A stretch of 64,000 nt of DNA from IMGVR_UViG_3300047320_000285:189741-253740; one strand, 5' to 3'. Positions 10,158 through 39,755 are shown, counted from the stretch's first letter. Notes: generated by a model not told the origin, from the letters alone. Numbers and translations: made by a program.

Positions 10158-10607
10158 ATGAACAGAATCGATTTCGATCTCATCGTTAATGAGTTGCGTA
10201 AGGGCTTGCGCCCCCACACCGATCCGATCGCTCAGGCAATCTTGGCGCGCACTCAGTTCTTCCACGAATTCCGCACTATCGGCCTCACAGCGGCTCGGCA
10301 GACGGGTAAGTCCCGTTGGGCCTTCGAGCAGCTGGCGAAGGATCGTAGCGCCTGTATGATCGTCCCCAAGGGCTTAACGCGCGATGAGATCTTTCAGTAC
10401 GAGGATCGCATGGGGGTGGTGAATGTGGATGAACGCACCTTTACGATCCGGGAAGTACAACACCTGATTTGCCGGGACAAGTTTGAAGCGTGGTCAACGA
10501 TTTACTTCGATGATGCCACGCACAAGTACCACTTTCTGAAAAAGCAATTGCTGGAGTATCTGCACAAACACCAGCGTTTTGAGACGACGATTATCCTCGT
10601 CGGTTAA
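10158..10607 (+). CDS. Small stand-alone P-loop NTPase-like protein
   Basis: Walker A-like AARQTGKS and Walker B-like IYFDDA in only 149 aa. Confidence 0.6.
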   Translation: MNRIDFDLIVNELRKGLRPHTDPIAQAILARTQFFHEFRTIGLTAARQTGKSRWAFEQLAKDRSACMIVPKGLTRDEIFQYEDRMGVVNVDERTFTIREVQHLICRDKFEAWSTIYFDDATHKYHFLKKQLLEYLHKHQRFETTIILVG

Positions 10608-10631
10608 ACCTCTTACTGATTACCTACTACA

Positions 10632-25334: not shown

Positions 25335-26028
25335 TGTTCCTTCCTCACTGTTTGTTGGGTCTTCGGCTTATCCGCATCGGTAGACCAGCTGACCACCTAA
25401 AGGTGTCACACTATAGCGGTCATATAGAAAAGTTACACAGTCTCTGCTCGGGCCGCTGTTGCCCCCTTCCCCTCGCCGCCCTCCCGGCCGCAAACCTTAA
25501 TACGTCCGCTCGCCGCGCGGCTGTAAGTCGCGAAGTTCAATGTAGCAGAAGGCTTCCAAGACTTCTGCGATAGATTGATACAAAACCGGTTTGTGTGTTG
25601 TAGGTTTTTCCCTTTACCTACCGGTAGGTCTCGATTTTACCGTAGGTACCTGCTCGATAGGGAGAGTTCCCCCAGAACTCTCCCGGCTATCCTAGCTAAG
25701 CTGGTTTGTTACAATTTGTTACCAAATTGCAGTTTTTGGGTTTTTAGAGTAAGATAATCTTTACCTCAGTATTACGGAGTAATACTGAGGATAGATGAAA
25801 TATTTAACTTCATTCATACCTGATGTAGAAATAATAAAAAAATAATCTTAGAGAAAAACGCGTGCCGCAGGCAGTTTTTTGAGAATTTCGGGAAAAAGTC
25901 TGTTACATCTTGTTACAATTGTAAGGAATGAGGGCAGAGGTCTGCCTATTTATTAGGCAACTGAGACGATACAGGGTCCTATCAGTTTTTACACCAAGCG
26001 ATCATGCTCTGAGTCACGCATGATGTGA
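25335..26028. other. Palindrome- and AT-rich divergent intergenic region (promoters; origin or pac candidate)
   Basis: 14-bp palindrome at 25616-25629, 12-bp inverted repeat at 25763-25789, four TGTTAC copies, AT-rich tract at about 25790-25860. Confidence 0.5.
25989..26006 (+). promoter_or_regulatory. Putative nvRNAP promoter TTAC-N10-CATG
   Basis: tttttac-accaagcgat-catg; resembles 42331-42351. Confidence 0.45.
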
Positions 26029-26316
26029 ATGAACAATGAGGAAGCGAACGTGATGTTGATGAACTTACTGGGTCGGCTCTGCGGTCGTCCCTTAACTAAA
26101 CAAGAACGACTCGAGCGTTTGCAGCAGAGTCTGATTACGACCATCCGTCAGGGTCGCGATGAGGACGATGCCACCGCAGTAGCACTGGCGATTCGGGCGG
26201 ATGCGATTCTGAAACAGGATCTACCGTTCGATCTGCGCTGTCAGCAGCTGCATGACGTGGTGGTTACGCATGCAGCCCAAAAGCTCCTCACGCGCCTCGA
26301 GTCTTATCACCACTAA
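26029..26316 (+). CDS. Hypothetical protein, 95 aa
   Basis: First ORF of a tightly packed operon. Confidence 0.55.
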   Translation: MNNEEANVMLMNLLGRLCGRPLTKQERLERLQQSLITTIRQGRDEDDATAVALAIRADAILKQDLPFDLRCQQLHDVVVTHAAQKLLTRLESYHH

Positions 26317-31849: not shown

Positions 31850-32528
31850 CTATGGGGCTGCGCCTTGTGTCGCTCGCCGCCGCGATTTGCACCGGCTTCG
31901 CACACGCGTTTAACGCGAGTTCGTGGAAGGTGGTCGCGGCGTCGACGGCATGGAACAGGGCTCAGCGTGACGAACCCGGACCTGGAATCGCTTCTGGGCA
32001 AACCGGGATCAGCCGGGGTCGCCAGTCAAGTGATGGCTGGCGCTTCGCACAACGCGTCCCGAGGAGGACTGTGGCACGGGTTAAGGGTATCCGTCAGCCG
32101 CAGTTAGCTTGACTCGGCGCGATGGTCTCGCGAAGAACCCAACTACCTCTGGGGCTGCACTGCCGAACCGAGCCGCGTCGGGGGAGCATCAGGTGTGGCG
32201 CCCAGCTGGGCACGTTGAGCTAACTCTCTTTCCACCAGAGAGTGATGAAACATGAAATGGCCTGCCACCGCCGGTGAGCAGACGGACGAAGCACTTCAGG
32301 GTTAGATGGGACCGTAAGCCGCGTGACGTATTAGCCCATGGGACTAGCGTACGGGAGCCGAGAGCCGCCGGAATCGCCTGCAAGGCACGAAGTCCAAGGT
32401 ATCCGCTACTTAGATGAGACCTAGTCCGCCCCCGGTTTCCGGGTCAGCCGCTAGGAGATTCGTAAGGGCGGGCCTTCAAGAACCTCTTGCTTCGGCAGGG
32501 GGTAGTCTTGAAGGCCCGTTTTTCTTTT
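31850..32528 (+). ncRNA. Candidate large structured non-coding RNA 1 (about 0.67 kb)
   Basis: Many nested helices (31857-31966 domain; 32102-32113/32214-32225 12 bp; 32341-32347/32421-32427) ending in a strong terminator; no credible CDS. Confidence 0.6.
32470..32528 (+). terminator. Compound intrinsic terminator closing candidate ncRNA 1
   Basis: gggccttcaaga-acctcttgc-ttcg-gcagggggt-ag-tcttgaaggccc followed by a T-run. Confidence 0.85.
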
Positions 32529-32538
32529 AGGAGTTTTC

Positions 32539-33048: not shown

Positions 33049-33135
33049 CTGGGTCCGGCCCGTGTGGCCGGGCTTTATGCCCCTGTGTGTGATTTCTTAC
33101 ATAGGCAACAAATACTGTGTATAGGGGACACCACT

Positions 33136-33495
33136 ATGATCCGATCTTACATAAACGACGCGCCACGAGCGTTGCTGATTCAGGATGTGCACGAGCTACG
33201 CGCCGAGTTCCGGTTGTTGTGGCAGGAGATGGCTGACTACGATATCGACGAACACGAGGTACTGGAGTGGATTATCGCCAACTGGTTGCGTGAGCGTCAT
33301 CATCTGCTTGTCTGGGACCACAACCCGCACAGCCCGACCATGCATGCCATCAAGAACTTCCTGCGTGAATTCACGGCTTTCCCCTTAAACCAGTTGCTTG
33401 AGAAATATATCATCGCACCTGTTCTGTATAAGGGCTGTCGAGACATCACCTTGGATTTGCGTGGCGTCGACCTGTACCTCTGGTACTTCAAATAA
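33136..33495 (+). CDS. Hypothetical protein, paralog array member 1
   Basis: SD gggga; C-terminal RGVDLYL. Confidence 0.7.
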   Translation: MIRSYINDAPRALLIQDVHELRAEFRLLWQEMADYDIDEHEVLEWIIANWLRERHHLLVWDHNPHSPTMHAIKNFLREFTAFPLNQLLEKYIIAPVLYKGCRDITLDLRGVDLYLWYFK

Positions 33496-33523
33496 CACGT
33501 CGCAATTTACGAGAACTAACCAC

Positions 33524-36165: not shown

Positions 36166-36569
36166 TGCAAGGCGAGCAGCAGTATCCGAAGAGTATTATC
36201 GTCGGCACCCGTGACATCATGCGGCAGTTCGAGCAGGAGACACGGGGCTTGCCGCTGAAGCCACAGGACTTCACCGAAATCATCACGCAGGTCTTGGATC
36301 TGCTGTTGAACTTCGGCCCGGATGCCTGTGGCAGCTATCAGGCTTTACCCGACGTCAGTCGTCTGGTAAAGAATGAATGGGTGGAAGACGAACAGTTGGT
36401 GCGACTGAAAAACGCCAGCTTTCGCTTAGCGTGGGCCGTCCACAATCAGTGCGAGGCCTTGGGCTTTCGCACTTTCCGTCAGGACGACGGCTCGGTCAAG
36501 CGGGACTTCCCGTATGCGATCAGTGGCTGGCATGGTGGTGACGTGGTGTTGGATCATATGCCCTTCTAA
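36165..36569 (+). CDS. Hypothetical protein, array member 7
   Basis: SD ggagg; C-terminal WHGGDVVL. Confidence 0.7.
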   Translation: MQGEQQYPKSIIVGTRDIMRQFEQETRGLPLKPQDFTEIITQVLDLLLNFGPDACGSYQALPDVSRLVKNEWVEDEQLVRLKNASFRLAWAVHNQCEALGFRTFRQDDGSVKRDFPYAISGWHGGDVVLDHMPF

Positions 36570-36595
36570 ACGCCTCGTCTTCGGGCGGGGCGTTT
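36568..36595 (+). terminator. Hairpin terminator
   Basis: aaacgcctcgtc-ttcg-ggcggggcgttt. Confidence 0.6.
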
Positions 36596-36622
36596 GTCCA
36601 ACACTTCTTTTTTGGTTCCGCC

Positions 36623-37033
36623 ATGACCTACAACTACCAGATTGGGGCGACGTATTCGTTCAATACGTACGCGCCGAGTGTACTCGGCAACGACTACCAG
36701 AATGTCAAGATGCTTGGTGTGCTGTCAGCCGATCTGGCCAGCCGCTTGGGTTGCGATATTCAGTCGCTGCAGCAAAAAGTCTTCCCGCAGGTGCCGCCGC
36801 AGAATCACATGTCGACGGACCCCACGCAGTACAACTACATTCAAGTGCAGCTGCAGAACGGTTCCCGCACCATTCTGGGCATGCCATGGATTGACGAGTC
36901 GTCGATTGTAGCCGTCACCGGTCAAACCATTACGGCGATTATCGGTAACGTCACCGCCGATGATCTGTCGGTGATTCGTGACTCGTTGTCGATGAACGGG
37001 TACACCCAAGTCACGCTGACCATCAGTGATTAA
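36623..37033 (+). CDS. Conserved phiKZ-like protein upstream of DNA polymerase (gp49-like), 136 aa
   Basis: Synteny; start MTYNYQIGATYSF. Confidence 0.65.
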   Translation: MTYNYQIGATYSFNTYAPSVLGNDYQNVKMLGVLSADLASRLGCDIQSLQQKVFPQVPPQNHMSTDPTQYNYIQVQLQNGSRTILGMPWIDESSIVAVTGQTITAIIGNVTADDLSVIRDSLSMNGYTQVTLTISD

Positions 37034-37061
37034 GCGGGCCTAAAGAGGTTACCAGTAAAAA

Positions 37062-37079
37062 TTACAGGCACTCTCCATG
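37062..37079 (+). promoter_or_regulatory. Putative nvRNAP promoter TTAC-N10-CATG driving candidate ncRNA 2
   Basis: aaaaattac-aggcactctc-catg. Confidence 0.45.
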
Positions 37080-37494
37080 AAGTGCACAGGGACCGGCACT
37101 CCCTGACGCGTTACACGAACGATTTCCTCCGCATGTCTCTCGCGTCCCGTTTGTGTAGTGCGATTAAACTTCCCACTGGGATTCTGCAGCTGGCGCGCAT
37201 GCGCCGCACGCGGAAGGGAAGAGTGCTGAGCGGGGGTGGCTTGCTAACGGTACGTTTTGCTCTCCTTGTACGACTCCGTTTCATCCACATGAGTGGCGAG
37301 TGCACGATGCTATTGCGCCAAGGCTGCGCTTAGGTCGTCCCCGGCATTCGGATGACAGGTCACCCCCTGCTCTTTTTTAGCCCAGCCGAGTTCTCGTAGT
37401 CTCCTCGTAGCACCAGTGCAAGGCCAGTAGTCCGTGTTGTATCTTGTCACGCAATCCTGAATTTAAGCGAGGACTTCGGTCCTCGCCTTTTTTT
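37079..37494 (+). ncRNA. Candidate large structured non-coding RNA 2 (about 0.42 kb) with a predicted pseudoknot
   Basis: Interleaved helices 37105-110/37141-146 and 37112-120/37149-157; 13-bp helix 37228-240/37359-372; terminator 37467-37494; no credible CDS. Confidence 0.6.
37467..37494 (+). terminator. Intrinsic terminator
   Basis: gcgaggac-ttcg-gtcctcgc-c-T7. Confidence 0.85.
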
Positions 37495-37547
37495 CCCTTT
37501 ATGCCTTTGCGTCAACGATTTGAGAAAATATTGGAGGTCCCAATTGT

Positions 37548-39755
37548 GTGCCAGCGTACATAGAGACGTCGCCACAGAACCAACAAAACAGGATCATCAG
37601 CGCCATGACACAGAATCCGTTTGTCCTGCCTTGGACCGAATACAAGCGGGATATTAACGTGCTGAGGGATTATATCGACGATCAGGCTCGTTATCTGTCG
37701 ATCGAAACCCAACAGCCCTACGAAGTCTGCGAGGCCTTCGTGAAAGAGCAGCTGCGCCCCGGCGGCCAGTTTGAATTCAAAGATCCGCGCTGCCTGTACA
37801 CGGAGCGTGGCGAGAACGGTGACCGGGAGCTAAAAGAAGGTCGCCTGTCGCAGTACTTGCATGAAGCGGTGCATCACGAACGCATGATTGCTCCGTCGCT
37901 CACCACGTATCTAAACCCCGAGCAAGAGCCAGCGTTGCTGGTTGACTTTATCGACGATAACGTCAAGGGTCGGTCGGTCGCGAAGAAAGCCATGTTCGCC
38001 GCACGCCGCGAAGGCAACAAGGTGATGGACAGTATTTACAACAACGAGCAGAACAACCGCAAGTTGTCAAATAATTCCATCTCAGGCGCGCACTTGTCGG
38101 CGGGTCAACCGCTTTACAACAAGACCGCCCACATTACCCTGACCAGTAACTGCCGCTCGACCTCCGGATTCGGCAATGCGAATAACGAGAAGCTGCTCTC
38201 GGGTAATCGCCACTACTGGTCGGTCCAGATTACGCTGAACAACATTATCTCGATCGTCAACCATACCGACTATGATCAGTTGGGGGCAGCGTGTGCGGAG
38301 TACGGCATTCGCTACCCGAGCTTTGATGAGACGATGGAATGCATCCAGTACTCGACCAACCTCTATTGGGCTGATCGTCGCTCGATGGACAAAGTCCGGT
38401 CGCTAGTGGAAAAGTTGACCCCGATCCAACGTGCTGCATTCGTCTATACCGGTGACCTCTACCACCTGATGCGCTTCAATGAGCAACTGGTGCGTGAATT
38501 TATCACCCGTATGTCGTACAAACCGACCGAACCGCATCCTGATCCGGAGTCCGTGATTAAGGCAGCCCCCGAAGATGTGGTCTTCACCGCCGTGCAAATC
38601 TGCGAAGAGCACTTTCGGGGCGTGGGTCCGGATGGCAAAAACATCGACTGGAAGAAGATGGTCGGGACCCGCGAGTACGGGATCTTGGGCGCTACGGTCG
38701 CTAACATCCAGTCGACCTTGGCGGTGTACTTCAACATGATCCGGGCGCTGTGGGTCACGCCGAATGTCCCGGCTTCGCTCGCATGGTTTCCGGATTCGAT
38801 TCGCCGCGCAGCCCTCACGTCCGACACGGACTCGACCATCTTTACCGTGCAGGACTGGATCGAGTGGTACTTTGGTGAGATCAAGGTGGATGCGGCTTCG
38901 AACGGCGTCGCCGCGGTGTTCATCTATTTCTCGTCTGCGTCTATCGTGCACATCCTCGCCCGGATGTCGGCGAACTTTGGGATTAAGGGTGAAAAGCGCC
39001 TGTTCCAGATTGCGATGAAGAACGAGTACAAGTTTGATGTATTCGTGCCCACGCAGGTGGCCAAGCACTACTTCGCGTTGATTGGCTGTCAGGAAGGCGA
39101 TCTCTACGCCAAGTACAAGAAAGAGATCAAGGGGGTGCATCTGAAGTCCTCCAACGCCCCGATCGAAGTCACCAAGAGCGCGGAAGACCTGATGCTCGAC
39201 ATCATGAACCGGGTCCTGAAAGGCCAGAAAATCAGCCTGACCAAGATCCTGCTCGATCTGGCCAACCGGGAACGACAGGTGATGGAGTCGATCGTCCGTG
39301 GCGACAGTCGCTTCTTCCGCAAGGGGCAGATCAAACCCCCGGAGTCCTACACCAAGGCAGCGGACGAAAGCCCGTATATCCAGTACGAAATGTGGCAAGA
39401 AGTCTTTGCCCCGGATTACGGGGATATTCCGCCGCCGCCGTACGTGTGCGTACGCATTGCCACCAGTGCCGATACCCCGGGCAAGTGCAAGGAGTGGCTG
39501 GATGGCTTGGAGAATCAGGCCTTTGCCAATCGCATGCGCAACTGGATGGTACGCAATAACAAGAAGTACATCGGCTCGATCCAGTTGCCCGAGCAGATGG
39601 TGTCCAGTAAAGGCGTCCCCAAAGAGATCCTGCAGATTGCGGGGGCTCGGCAAATTGTGCGTGATACCACCGGCGTGTTTTATCTGATTCTGGAAGCCTT
39701 GGGGTTCTTCATGCTCGACGACAAGATCTCGCGTCTGGCCATGGATCTCTACTAA
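37548..39755 (+). CDS. Family-B DNA polymerase, polymerase-domain subunit (phiKZ gp50-like), 735 aa; start may be 37605
   Basis: RKLSNNSISG (motif B), AALTSDTDSTIF (motif C), AKHYFA, KGVHLKSS. Confidence 0.9.
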   Translation: MPAYIETSPQNQQNRIISAMTQNPFVLPWTEYKRDINVLRDYIDDQARYLSIETQQPYEVCEAFVKEQLRPGGQFEFKDPRCLYTERGENGDRELKEGRLSQYLHEAVHHERMIAPSLTTYLNPEQEPALLVDFIDDNVKGRSVAKKAMFAARREGNKVMDSIYNNEQNNRKLSNNSISGAHLSAGQPLYNKTAHITLTSNCRSTSGFGNANNEKLLSGNRHYWSVQITLNNIISIVNHTDYDQLGAACAEYGIRYPSFDETMECIQYSTNLYWADRRSMDKVRSLVEKLTPIQRAAFVYTGDLYHLMRFNEQLVREFITRMSYKPTEPHPDPESVIKAAPEDVVFTAVQICEEHFRGVGPDGKNIDWKKMVGTREYGILGATVANIQSTLAVYFNMIRALWVTPNVPASLAWFPDSIRRAALTSDTDSTIFTVQDWIEWYFGEIKVDAASNGVAAVFIYFSSASIVHILARMSANFGIKGEKRLFQIAMKNEYKFDVFVPTQVAKHYFALIGCQEGDLYAKYKKEIKGVHLKSSNAPIEVTKSAEDLMLDIMNRVLKGQKISLTKILLDLANRERQVMESIVRGDSRFFRKGQIKPPESYTKAADESPYIQYEMWQEVFAPDYGDIPPPPYVCVRIATSADTPGKCKEWLDGLENQAFANRMRNWMVRNNKKYIGSIQLPEQMVSSKGVPKEILQIAGARQIVRDTTGVFYLILEALGFFMLDDKISRLAMDLY

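What the first reader, a model, noticed from the sequence alone, without database searches (positions are those of the whole stretch)
37079..37494. Candidate pseudoknotted ncRNA (about 415 nt) with its own promoter and terminator, upstream of DNA polymerase
It is bounded by a TTAC-N10-CATG promoter-like motif (37062-37079) and a UUCG terminator (37467-37494), with no SD-supported ORF. Helices gacgcg/cgcgtc (37105-110/37141-146) and tacacgaac/gtttgtgta (37112-120/37149-157) interleave as an H-type pseudoknot. ttcctccgc (37124-132) can pair with gcggaagggaa (37210-220), crossing both. Other elements: caggga/tccctg, ggcgc-gcat-gcgcc, and a 13-bp helix gagcgggggtggc/gtcaccccctgctc (37228-240/37359-372) enclosing aacgg/ccgtt, tcatcc/ggatga and gcgc/gcgc, followed by U6. 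That U6 gives a possible second, conditional termination point. Options are an independent structural RNA, a ribozyme, or a riboswitch-like attenuator of polymerase expression.
Basis: partly seen in the sequence, partly recalled or inferred. Interest (0 to 1): 0.8.

Follow-up and report, generated by a model that had tools for sequence, protein, structure and literature searches.

The report
Conserved structured RNA of jumbo phages
Between a baseplate-protein gene and the DNA polymerase gene of a phiKZ-like jumbo phage lies a non-coding RNA element of about 410 bases; its fold is kept in many related phages, it matches no described RNA family, and its best-conserved loop is the exact complement of the phage's ribosome-binding sites, which hints at a role in translation control.

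Summary
The window comes from a chimallivirus (a phiKZ-like jumbo phage). The finding lies in the 571-nt gap between the gene for the SH3DP protein (the phiKZ gp49 homologue) and the divergent family-B DNA polymerase gene.

**Real:**
- The 83-aa ORF is not conserved.
- The gap is conserved in size and in blocks of sequence.
- In four independent clades it folds into a structure with many compensatory base changes.
- G·U pairs far outnumber A·C, so the plus-strand RNA is the folded molecule.
- A strong intrinsic terminator (37467-37494) closes it.
- A bipartite promoter-like motif (A/T-rich TTAC, then AAGTG) opens it, and the same motif sits upstream of three protein genes in the window.
- The pol gene has its own hairpin–TTTATGCC unit.

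**Not supported:** the H-type pseudoknot (stem 1 and the long-range third helix fail covariation) and any ribozyme or riboswitch assignment. Rfam has no match.

**New:**
- The family reaches dozens of metagenomic phages and the cultured Burkholderia phage FLC9.
- Its invariant hairpin loop (UCCUU, CUCCUUGU here) is the reverse complement of the phage's RBS consensus ACAAGGAG.

My best reading is a separate ncRNA gene of a new family, possibly an anti-RBS riboregulator. No transcript data could be found.

The parts
36623..37033 (+). Upstream gene: SH3DP protein (PF20287), the homologue of phiKZ gp49. Context only, not part of the RNA.
   Evidence: Pfam 2.7e-34. PDB 9xqs chain M, PHIKZ049, E 5.9e-19. 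gp49 forms a baseplate ring in phiKZ (PMC13250141).
37055..37084 (+). Bipartite promoter-like motif: A-rich/TTAC (37056-37065), an 11-14 nt spacer, then ATG-AAGTG (37077-37084). The predicted 5' end of the RNA is at about 37070-37085.
   Evidence: Nearly invariant in the clade. An equivalent motif lies in the first 90 nt of 36 of 54 long gaps, against 6 expected and 3 in an interior control window. Like motifs lie upstream of protein genes at 33504, 41356 and 42329. Function as a promoter is inferred.
37084..37494 (+). Predicted non-coding RNA, about 411 nt. A shorter form of about 295 nt would result if transcription stops at U6 (37378).
   Evidence: No conserved ORF. RNAalifold gives 110 pairs, 29-31 of them compensatory. 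G·U 81 against A·C 13. No Rfam match.
37087..37105 (+). H1 hairpin CAGGGA/UCCCUG with loop CCGGCAC. The loop core GGC is kept in other clades.
   Evidence: 96% paired, 1 compensatory pair. The FLC9 clade has GGGC-CCGGCAA-GCCC at the same place.
37107..37162 (+). H2 long hairpin (37107-21/37148-62). Its apical part carries the invariant unpaired GAUUUCC and GCGUCCCG.
   Evidence: MFE fold. Inner 10 bp: 89% paired with 5 compensatory pairs. Outer 5 bp: 86% paired.
37169..37221 (+). H3 arm: CUUCC…/…GGGAAG, a middle helix 37182-86/37211-15, and the tip GGCGC/GCGCC.
   Evidence: 100%, 100% and 93% paired, with 3, 4 and 2 compensatory pairs.
37228..37378 (+). P4 domain. The closing helix is 37232-43/37356-67 with a GAGC/GCUC extension (37228-31/37369-72), followed by U6 (37373-78). 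Inside it lie the anti-RBS hairpin, UCAUCC/GGAUGA (37281-86/37350-55) and the distal arm (37292-37342).
   Evidence: Covariance model R1 and alignment A10: 93% paired, 15 double-change pairs against 5.3±1.8 in shuffles, 0/500.
37246..37280 (+). Anti-RBS hairpin. Stems are 37246-50/37276-80, 37254-56/37272-74 and 37258-60/37268-70. The loop is UCUCCUU (37261-67). CUCCUUGU (37262-69) is the complement of the RBS consensus ACAAGGAG.
   Evidence: The loop and inner stem are invariant and the outer stem covaries. UCCUU is invariant in 16 hairpins from several clades with unrelated stems. For the RBS consensus.
37380..37386 (+). Invariant RCCCAGC. It can pair with 37225-31 (GCUGAGC) as an outer helix, which excludes the GAGC/GCUC terminator-like extension.
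   Evidence: 89% paired, 1 compensatory pair. The FLC9 clade has an analogous outer helix UAGAC/GUCUA.
37444..37459 (+). Invariant 3' motif UUGUCACGCAAUCCUG. Its partner is unknown.
   Evidence: Invariant in 6 sequences. The FLC9 clade has UUGUAACGACCUGUAG at the same place.
37467..37494 (+). Intrinsic terminator: 8-bp G+C-rich stem, UUCG loop, U7.
   Evidence: Terminator scan. The stem sequence differs between relatives while pairing and the U run are kept. 39 of 49 representative long gaps have such a hairpin near their 3' end.
37496..37505 (+). CCTTTATGCC: a recurrent terminator/promoter punctuation motif. Its core TATG (37500-03) equals the phiKZ late-promoter core T-3ATG+1. It is the probable start of the pol mRNA.
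   Evidence: 14 sites in the window against 4.2 expected, 0/100 shuffles. Most directly follow a G+C-rich hairpin. The phiKZ consensus is from PMC7598289.
37548..39755 (+). Downstream gene: divergent family-B DNA polymerase (PF20286). Context only. The start is probably GTG 37548, behind the Shine-Dalgarno sequence GGAGG at 37533-37.
   Evidence: Pfam 8e-245. The frame from GTG stays open in L005 and L006 despite indels (read from the alignment).

Best explanation
The interval is a gene for a structured non-coding RNA of about 0.41 kb on the plus strand. It belongs to a previously undescribed RNA family that occupies the gp49(SH3DP)–DNA polymerase gap in a large clade of chimalliviruses.

Shown:
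- It is not coding.
- Its helices are maintained by compensatory changes in four separate clades.
- G·U asymmetry fixes the strand.
- It ends at a canonical terminator.
- Pol has its own hairpin–TTTATGCC unit downstream.
- One stable hairpin presents an invariant pyrimidine loop (UCCUU; CUCCUUGU in this phage). That loop is the perfect complement of ACAAGGAG, the RBS consensus of the phage's own genes.

Inferred:
- It is transcribed from its own phage-type promoter (A/T-rich TTAC … AAGTG), starting at about 37070-37085.
- It ends at 37494, with a shorter form possible at U6 (37378).
- It acts in trans through the exposed anti-RBS loop, together with a second unpaired UUUCC motif. It would pair with Shine-Dalgarno regions of phage mRNAs and so tune their translation, as staphylococcal sRNAs do with C-rich loops.
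- The rest of the fold serves as a scaffold.

My confidence is about 0.9 that it is a conserved structured RNA element, about 0.55 that it is a separate transcript, and about 0.25 for the anti-RBS mechanism.
For: Genome and context:
- The genome is identified by SH3DP, divDNApol and chimallin.
- Every close relative has a gap of 474-574 nt with no consistent gene call.

Structure:
- The ORF is not conserved.
- Clade A: 110 pairs with 29-31 compensatory, 94% paired against 44-46% for slid controls.
- P4 domain: 0/500 shuffles reach the observed covariation.
- Clade B (FLC9): 96 pairs, 28 compensatory. Clade D: 83 pairs, 21 compensatory. Clade E: 117 pairs, 13 compensatory.
- G·U against A·C: 81 vs 13 in clade A and 124 vs 3 in clade B. 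The alifold energy is lower on the plus strand.
- 48 of 49 representative gaps fold with z < -2, against 12 of 48 pol-gene control segments (p = 1.5e-14).

Boundaries:
- Terminator.
- TTTATGCC enrichment.
- Promoter-like motif.

Anti-RBS loop:
- YTCCTTGT occurs 17 times against 3.3 expected. Most of the other 16 copies (at least 12) lie 3-10 nt upstream of a long ORF on the opposite strand, i.e. are RBSs; the one at 37262 is this loop.
- 14 of 36 AAGGAR-type RBSs are preceded by AC.
- UCCUU hairpins with unrelated stems occur across clades.
- TCCTT[GA] occurs 39 times against 15 expected in the representative gaps.
- FLC9 shares the ACAAGGA bias (14/39). SURPRISE13, which has the same host species and a 110-nt gap, has 3/19.
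Against: - There is no transcript evidence. No RNA run was listed for this sequence, and the sources are DNA metagenomes.
- The upstream motif GTAAAAATTACAG is not itself repeated in the window. The promoter regular expression was designed after I had seen the data.
- Any pyrimidine-rich loop complements any Shine-Dalgarno sequence. Complementarity to the pol RBS of this phage is only about 5 bp.
- My test of whether UCCUU lies in hairpin loops more often than other positions did not discriminate (62% vs 52%).
- The RBS comparison between phages rests on small numbers.
- The clade-A covariance model does not reach clades B-E. Homology between clades therefore rests on shared position, shared motif order and a similar architecture.
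Confidence: 0.6

Rival explanations
1. A cis-acting leader of the polymerase gene. Transcription from the upstream promoter meets one or two conditional terminators (U6 at 37378, U7 at 37494). Read-through, controlled by a ligand or a protein that binds the fold, adds to pol expression. The short RNA would then be a by-product, as proposed for phiKZ 5'UTR-derived RNAs.
For: In phiKZ, 34 of 42 terminators inside 5' UTRs give either a short RNA or a read-through mRNA (PMC10914365). The position directly upstream of pol is kept across the family. In clade A two mutually exclusive pairings of 37225-31 exist, a terminator-like extension and an outer helix, and both have some covariation.
Against: Pol has its own TTTATGCC unit after the terminator in every clade. 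The terminal terminator is strong. I found no covarying antiterminator. The U run after P4 is absent from clade B. No known riboswitch matches.
Confidence: 0.2
2. A structured 3' UTR of the SH3DP (baseplate) operon with no promoter of its own. It would stabilise the upstream mRNA against 3' exonucleases, or be processed into a 3'UTR-derived RNA.
For: No terminator lies between the SH3DP stop codon (37033) and the element. 3'UTR-derived phage ncRNAs are known in PAK_P3 (PMC10914365).
Against: A conserved bipartite promoter-like motif sits exactly at the 5' edge in 36 of 54 long gaps, and the same motif precedes protein genes in the window. In phiKZ-type phages a terminator follows gp49 before a like motif and a mini-unit of about 85 nt. 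Sequence-specific invariant loops are more than a stabiliser would need.
Confidence: 0.15
3. A mimic of the 3' end of 16S rRNA (the anti-Shine-Dalgarno sequence). It would act as a decoy for a protein that recognises that sequence, for example a host endoribonuclease toxin specific for UCCUU, rather than pairing with mRNAs.
For: The invariant loop core UCCUU/CCUCCUU equals the anti-SD core. From my own knowledge, not checked here: MazF-mt3 cleaves UCCUU in 16S and 23S rRNA, and phages can escape ToxIN with antitoxin-RNA mimics.
Against: This is inference only. No such toxin is known for the (unknown) host. The extended match to ACAAGGAG, beyond what 16S rRNA would pair with, fits mRNA pairing better.
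Confidence: 0.05
4. A DNA-level element (replication origin) or a decayed or small protein gene.
For: It is a non-coding stretch next to the polymerase gene. An 83-aa ORF (37082-37333) exists on the plus strand.
Against: G·U against A·C asymmetry. No iterons. The ORFs differ in every relative, and the indels are not multiples of three. There are no Pfam or PHROG hits.
Confidence: 0.03

Closest known systems
phiKZ / 201phi2-1 '5'UTR-derived' and intergenic ncRNA candidates found by ONT-cappable-seq (PMC10914365, PMC11512511)
   Same: Same virus family. A phage-type promoter is followed by a terminator just upstream of a protein gene, giving a non-coding transcript conserved among relatives. The phiKZ gp49–gp50 gap itself holds a promoter-like motif and a unit of about 85 nt made of a hairpin and a U run.
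   Different: Those RNAs are under 250 nt and lack a demonstrated conserved multi-helix fold. The one reported as conserved between genera lies upstream of the tail gene gp182, not pol. The element here is about 410 nt with about 110 conserved pairs. I could not check whether the phiKZ gp49–gp50 unit is in their tables, because no supplement is held.
Staphylococcal sRNAs with C-rich loops that pair with Shine-Dalgarno sequences (RNAIII, RsaE/RoxS type; own knowledge, review PMC9266662 listed)
   Same: Unpaired pyrimidine-rich motifs are displayed in hairpin loops and are complementary to ribosome-binding sites.
   Different: The sequences and hosts are unrelated. The motif here is UCCUU(GU) rather than UCCC. 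The RNA is far larger. Target pairing is untested.
Large structured phage-associated RNAs of unknown function (GOLLD, ROOL; in Rfam)
   Same: Several hundred nucleotides, many covarying helices, carried by phages, function unknown.
   Different: No sequence or structure match: Rfam scans of the window and of eight relatives found nothing. The genomic context differs, as those RNAs lie near tRNAs.
T4/RB69 gp43 translational operator (own knowledge)
   Same: An RNA structure next to a phage DNA polymerase gene.
   Different: That operator is a single hairpin overlapping the pol RBS on the pol mRNA. Here a terminator and a promoter-like unit separate the element from the pol leader.

Membership tests
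Any Rfam 15 family (riboswitches, ribozymes, group I/II introns, GOLLD/ROOL, tmRNA, 6S and others) | Covariance-model match at or near the gathering score | tested here: not met
   No hit inside 37034-37604 even at E ≤ 10. The whole window has none at gathering score. Eight related loci have none in the gap at E ≤ 0.1.
Intrinsic (factor-independent) terminator | G+C-rich hairpin directly followed by a U run, kept in relatives | tested here: met
   37467-86 plus U7. Relatives keep the pairing and the U run with different stem sequences.
   Stem 2 is supported (89% paired, 5 compensatory pairs). Stem 1 is 73% paired with 0 compensatory pairs and has uncompensated changes.
Riboswitch / transcription attenuator | Lies in the 5' UTR of the regulated gene on the same transcript | tested here: inconclusive
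   It lies upstream of pol, but a strong terminator and a TTTATGCC promoter-type unit intervene. No transcript data were available.
Riboswitch / transcription attenuator | Mutually exclusive terminator and antiterminator helices, both conserved | tested here: inconclusive
   For the internal P4+U6 stop, two exclusive pairings of 37225-31 each show some covariation, but only in clade A. No antiterminator was found for the terminal terminator.
Protein-coding gene | Open reading frame conserved in relatives, with substitutions and indels that respect the frame | tested here: not met
   The longest ORFs differ in frame, strand and sequence in every relative. No family match.
phiKZ-type late promoter | TATG with G as +1 (PMC7598289) | tested here: met
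   TATG at 37500-03 within CCTTTATGCC, which is enriched 14 vs 4.2. Only the sequence criterion was tested; initiation is not testable here.
Independent ncRNA gene | Own transcription start and defined 3' end observed in RNA | not testable with these tools
   No RNA run was listed. Only promoter-like and terminator motifs are available.
SD-targeting riboregulator | Unpaired motif complementary to ribosome-binding sites | tested here: met
   The loop CUCCUUGU is the complement of ACAAGGAG, and it is unpaired in the predicted folds.
SD-targeting riboregulator | Demonstrated pairing with target mRNAs and an effect on their translation | not testable with these tools
   This needs experiments.

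The most novel reading that the evidence does not exclude
A new class of large riboregulator specific to nucleus-forming jumbo phages. The RNA would display a copy of the anti-Shine-Dalgarno sequence, extended to match the phage's own RBS consensus (ACAAGGAG). With it the RNA would bind many phage mRNAs at their ribosome-binding sites, timing or gating their translation or their handling between the phage nucleus and the cytoplasm.
Probability: 0.2. Interest if true: 0.85.

Novelty: new variant of a known kind. Interest (0 to 1): 0.66.

Why it matters
Chimalliviruses are a main model for phage 'nuclei', for phage-encoded RNA polymerases and for evasion of bacterial defences, yet their RNA biology is almost unexplored. 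A 400-nt RNA whose fold has been kept while the polymerase protein diverged to about 50-60% identity must do something important. It sits in a fixed place, which makes it easy to find and delete. A cultured phage (FLC9) carries it, so it can be tested directly. If the anti-RBS loop is functional, this would be a phage-encoded global regulator of translation, a kind not yet described for jumbo phages. Even without a function it deserves an Rfam family, and it corrects gene calls that place spurious small ORFs in this gap.

Tried and rejected
- DNA search of the phage collection with the region: no match.
- Exact-pattern scan of IMG/VR with the conserved block: only the source contig.
- RNA-seq look-up: none listed.
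- Covariance model R1, built from clade A only: it recovers clade A at E ≤ 1e-37. It gives only marginal hits in L017 and L015 (E about 0.01), and otherwise matches terminators. No formal cross-clade alignment was obtained.
- Test of whether UCCUU lies in hairpin loops more often than other positions: not discriminating (50/80 against 52% background).
- Ideas dropped for lack of covariation or conservation when I read alignments A3/A4 and A7 by eye:
  - pairing of the H1 loop with the pol start region;
  - pairing of the 3' motif UUGUCACG with the 5' domain;
  - an antiterminator formed by UCUCCUCG with the terminator's 5' arm;
  - a specific extended match of the loop to the pol RBS (8 bp in FLC9 but about 5 bp here);
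  - an intramolecular purine partner for the loop.
- Replication origin: no iterons.
- An RNP made with SH3DP: weakened, because gp49 is a baseplate ring protein in phiKZ.

Full report
**What the window is.** The flanking genes are a 136-aa SH3DP protein (PF20287; 36623-37033) and a divergent family-B DNA polymerase (PF20286; 37548/37605-39755). The chimallin gene lies a few kb downstream in syntenic relatives. The window matches IMG/VR contig UViG_3300047320_000285 (253.7 kb) at 100% and comes from a rhizosphere metagenome. It is therefore a chimallivirus, a phiKZ-like nucleus-forming jumbo phage. The closest cultured relative is Burkholderia phage FLC9, with SH3DP 49% and pol 62% identical. 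In phiKZ the two genes are PHIKZ049 and PHIKZ050.

**The observation.**
- The terminator (8-bp stem 37467-74/37479-86, UUCG loop, U7) is the only strong plus-strand terminator in the neighbourhood.
- The single sequence folds only modestly better than shuffles (z = -2.3 on the plus strand, -1.6 on the minus strand). On its own it proves little.
- Rfam gives nothing in the gap even at E ≤ 10. It gives nothing in the whole window at gathering score, and nothing in the gaps of eight relatives.

**Relatives.** Protein searches with pol and SH3DP gave metagenomic relatives, and I fetched their contigs.
- All relatives keep a gap of 474-574 nt between the two genes.
- Gene callers place nothing there, or an inconsistent small ORF.
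- The 83-aa ORF of the window is already gone in L009, whose gap is 87% identical. No ORF on either strand is shared.
- The alignment shows long invariant blocks separated by variable stretches, with indels that are not multiples of three.

The interval is therefore conserved but not coding.

**Structure in the window's clade (five distinct sequences).** RNAalifold predicts 110 pairs, 29 of them with compensatory double changes. My own count per helix gives 94% canonical cells and 31 compensatory pairs. Controls with the 3' partner slid by 1-3 columns give 44-46% canonical cells and 4-10 compensatory pairs. I built a covariance model (R1) for the 170-nt P4 domain. On the model-fitted alignment, 15 pairs change on both sides, against 5.3±1.8 in 500 column shuffles (0/500) and 1-6 in slid controls. 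The caveat is that the structure was derived from these same sequences and there are few of them.

The supported helices are:
- H1, 37088-92/37100-04.
- H2, 37107-21/37148-62.
- A three-part H3 arm, 37169-37221.
- The long P4 helix 37232-43/37356-67 and its interior: the hairpin 37246-80, UCAUCC/GGAUGA, and the distal arm.
- A weaker helix, 37417-27/37443-53.
- The terminator.

- Its stem 2 is simply the inner part of H2 and is well supported.
- Its stem 1, which would make the H-type pseudoknot, is not supported. The 3' strand GCGUCC is invariant, while the 5' strand changes without compensation (73% paired, 0 compensatory pairs). An ordinary coaxial extension of H2 fits better.
- The crossing helix UUCCUCCGC/GCGGAAGGG is no better than slid controls.
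- The 13-bp helix is real. Its outermost four pairs change from GAGC/GCUC to AGGU/AUCU and GGGU/ACUC, and a U5-6 run follows in all five sequences. A second, internal terminator-like stop at about 37378 is therefore plausible in this clade.
- The same 5' nucleotides can instead pair with the invariant RCCCAGC at 37380-86 (89% paired). By analogy with an outer helix in the FLC9 clade, that pairing may be the mature fold.

**Strand.** In the predicted pairs, G·U cells outnumber A·C cells 81 to 13 in clade A and 124 to 3 in clade B. The consensus energy is about 23 kcal/mol better on the plus strand in both clades. The folded molecule is the plus-strand RNA, the same sense as the flanking genes.

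**Breadth.** Using a pol alignment I fetched 160 further loci from IMG/VR and JGI metagenomes and measured the SH3DP–pol gap in each.
- Of 109 distinct gaps, 54 are 380-640 nt long. These are nearly all the phages whose pol N-terminus is at least about 48% identical to this one.
- More distant phages, and most cultured ones, have 100-300 nt: SURPRISE13 110, Ea35-70 125, HPP-Temi about 180, phiKZ type 200, Goslar 298.
- Three further clades, folded independently, each give a multi-helix consensus with compensatory changes:
  - the FLC9 clade, 96 pairs with 28 compensatory;
  - L039/L058/L054/L055, 83 pairs with 21 compensatory;
  - L040/L067/L113, 117 pairs with 13 compensatory.
- 48 of 49 representative long gaps fold with z < -2. 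Only 12 of 48 length-matched segments of the adjacent pol gene do so (p = 1.5e-14).
- 39 of 49 have a terminator-like hairpin near the 3' end.

The clades share an order of features:
1. a promoter-like motif;
2. a first hairpin with a GGC-containing loop;
3. a long G-run/C-run helix enclosing a hairpin with a pyrimidine loop;
4. a conserved UUGUNACG…CCUG motif;
5. a terminator;
6. TTTATGCC.

The clade-A model does not detect the other clades. Cross-clade homology is therefore argued from position, motif order and architecture. It is not shown by a single alignment.

**Boundaries.**

*Downstream.* CCTTTATGCC (37496-505) is a recurrent signal of this phage: 14 copies against 4.2 expected, 0/100 shuffles. 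It nearly always follows a G+C-rich hairpin directly. Its core equals the phiKZ late-promoter core T-3ATG+1 (PMC7598289). Pol therefore has its own punctuation and start unit after the terminator.

*Upstream.* AGTAAAAA(T/A)TACAG…CCAT(N)AAGTGCA is almost invariant in the clade.
- Across the family, 36 of 54 long gaps carry an A/T-run + (T)AC, a 9-17 nt spacer and a (A/T)(A/G/T)TG motif within their first 90 nt. Shuffles give 6, and an interior control window gives 3. The pattern was written after I had seen the data.
- In this window, like motifs precede protein genes at 33504, 41356 and 42329. The last lies in the intergenic gap about 100 nt upstream of the next plus-strand ORF.
- In phiKZ-type phages a terminator follows gp49. 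Then comes TTATTTTTAC-N-AATGTG and a unit of about 85 nt made of a hairpin and a U run. This looks like a miniature of the same transcription unit.

I therefore favour a separate transcript starting at about 37070-37085, but no RNA data could be found. The published phiKZ and 201phi2-1 transcriptome papers, as far as they are held here, do not mention this gap.

**The most conserved feature.** One hairpin carries an invariant loop core UCCUU(G), and its stems are unrelated in sequence between clades. Examples are GGGG/CCCC, AGCGGUG/CGCCGCU, a 15-bp A/U stem, and AUUGGG/CCCAAU.
- TCCTT[GA] is enriched in the representative gaps, 39 against 15 expected and a maximum of 28 in 300 shuffles.
- In this phage the loop reads CUCCUUGU (37262-69).
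- That 8-mer is itself over-represented in the window, 17 against 3.3 expected. Most of the other copies, at least 12 of 16, are the reverse strand of ribosome-binding sites ACAAGGAR placed 3-10 nt before the start codon of a long ORF.
- 14 of 36 AAGGAR-type RBSs are preceded by AC, where about 2 would be expected.
- FLC9, whose loop is UUCCUUGU, shows the same bias (14/39). SURPRISE13, which infects the same host species but lacks the long gap, shows it less (3/19). The numbers are small.
- A second invariant unpaired UUUCC(UCC) motif sits in the apical part of H2. The FLC9 clade has CCUCCUCC at the corresponding place.

The RNA thus displays one or two copies of an anti-Shine-Dalgarno-like sequence, and that sequence matches the phage's own extended RBS consensus.

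**How it most likely works.**
- Shown: it is a conserved, folded, non-coding plus-strand RNA element, closed by a terminator, with an exposed anti-RBS loop.
- Inferred: it has its own promoter, acts in trans, and pairs with the RBS regions of phage mRNAs to modulate translation, with the large fold serving as a scaffold or protein platform.
- Rivals:
  - a conditional-termination leader of pol, as is common in phiKZ;
  - a structured 3' UTR of the baseplate-gene operon;
  - a 16S 3'-end mimic acting as a protein decoy.
- A DNA origin and a coding gene are essentially excluded.

**Comparison and novelty.** The element matches no Rfam family. The nearest things are:
- the short 5'UTR-derived ncRNA candidates of phiKZ and 201phi2-1, which share the virus family and the promoter–terminator layout but are much smaller and lie at other loci;
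- SD-targeting sRNAs with C-rich loops, which share the proposed mechanism but are unrelated;
- the large phage-borne RNAs GOLLD and ROOL, which share size and mystery but are unrelated.

I rate it a new RNA family of a known general kind. Its existence is well supported, its transcript boundaries are moderately supported, and its function is weakly supported.

Noticed in passing
window 36623-37033: The 'DNA-polymerase-associated' SH3DP protein matches PDB chains of PHIKZ049 (9xqs_M, E 6e-19). In the 2026 phiKZ virion atlas, gp49 forms a hexagonal ring of 12 dimers in the baseplate. The Pfam name therefore reflects gene neighbourhood, not a shown polymerase function. An ASO screen also lists PHIKZ049 among its hits.
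   Followed up: partly
window 37533-37607: The polymerase probably starts at GTG 37548, 10 nt after a GGAGG at 37533-37, not at ATG 37605. The 14-19-codon extension stays in frame and open in L005 and L006 despite indels.
   Followed up: partly
window, 14 sites (e.g. 8245, 11481, 27861, 33074, 40195, and on the minus strand 24356, 56067, 63446): A G+C-rich hairpin directly followed by TTTATGCC recurs throughout the phage, sometimes as back-to-back divergent pairs (11446/11479, 40152/40193). It is likely a combined terminator and late-promoter punctuation.
   Followed up: partly
window, e.g. 30819, 46704, 53124, 58741: The phage's ribosome-binding sites have an extended consensus (A)ACAAGGAR. 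The AC is not explained by pairing with a standard 16S 3' end (own knowledge of the 16S sequence).
   Followed up: partly
window 36568-36612: A perfect 12-bp hairpin (weak Rfam sX6 terminator-like hit) and a displaced T6 run lie between the previous gene and SH3DP. SH3DP itself has no recognisable Shine-Dalgarno sequence.
   Followed up: no
window 25401-26251, 32113-32538, 10266-10619, 33049-33397: These are other unusually long stretches (851, 426, 354 and 349 nt) without a long ORF in my crude gene call. There are no tRNAs and no Rfam hits in the window. They may hold small genes or further RNAs.
   Followed up: no
L182 2280-2479 (phiKZ-type KEN51), L180 3888-4064: The phiKZ gp49–gp50 gap (200 nt) holds, in order: a terminator, TTATTTTTAC…AATGTG, a stretch of about 85 nt with a hairpin, and a U-rich tail containing UUCCUU. 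It is a possible miniature relative of the RNA.
   Followed up: partly
L094, L069, L104, L051, L046 (gaps of 1064-1298 nt); L181 and L183 (RP12, FLC4-3B): In some relatives the SH3DP–pol gap is much longer or holds inserted genes (in RP12 a 605-aa protein and a 148-aa protein), so the synteny is occasionally broken.
   Followed up: no
window 37064-37073 and 37092-37101: A 10-nt direct repeat, ACAGGCACTC / ACCGGCACTC, links the promoter-like region and the H1 loop. Its meaning is unknown.
   Followed up: no
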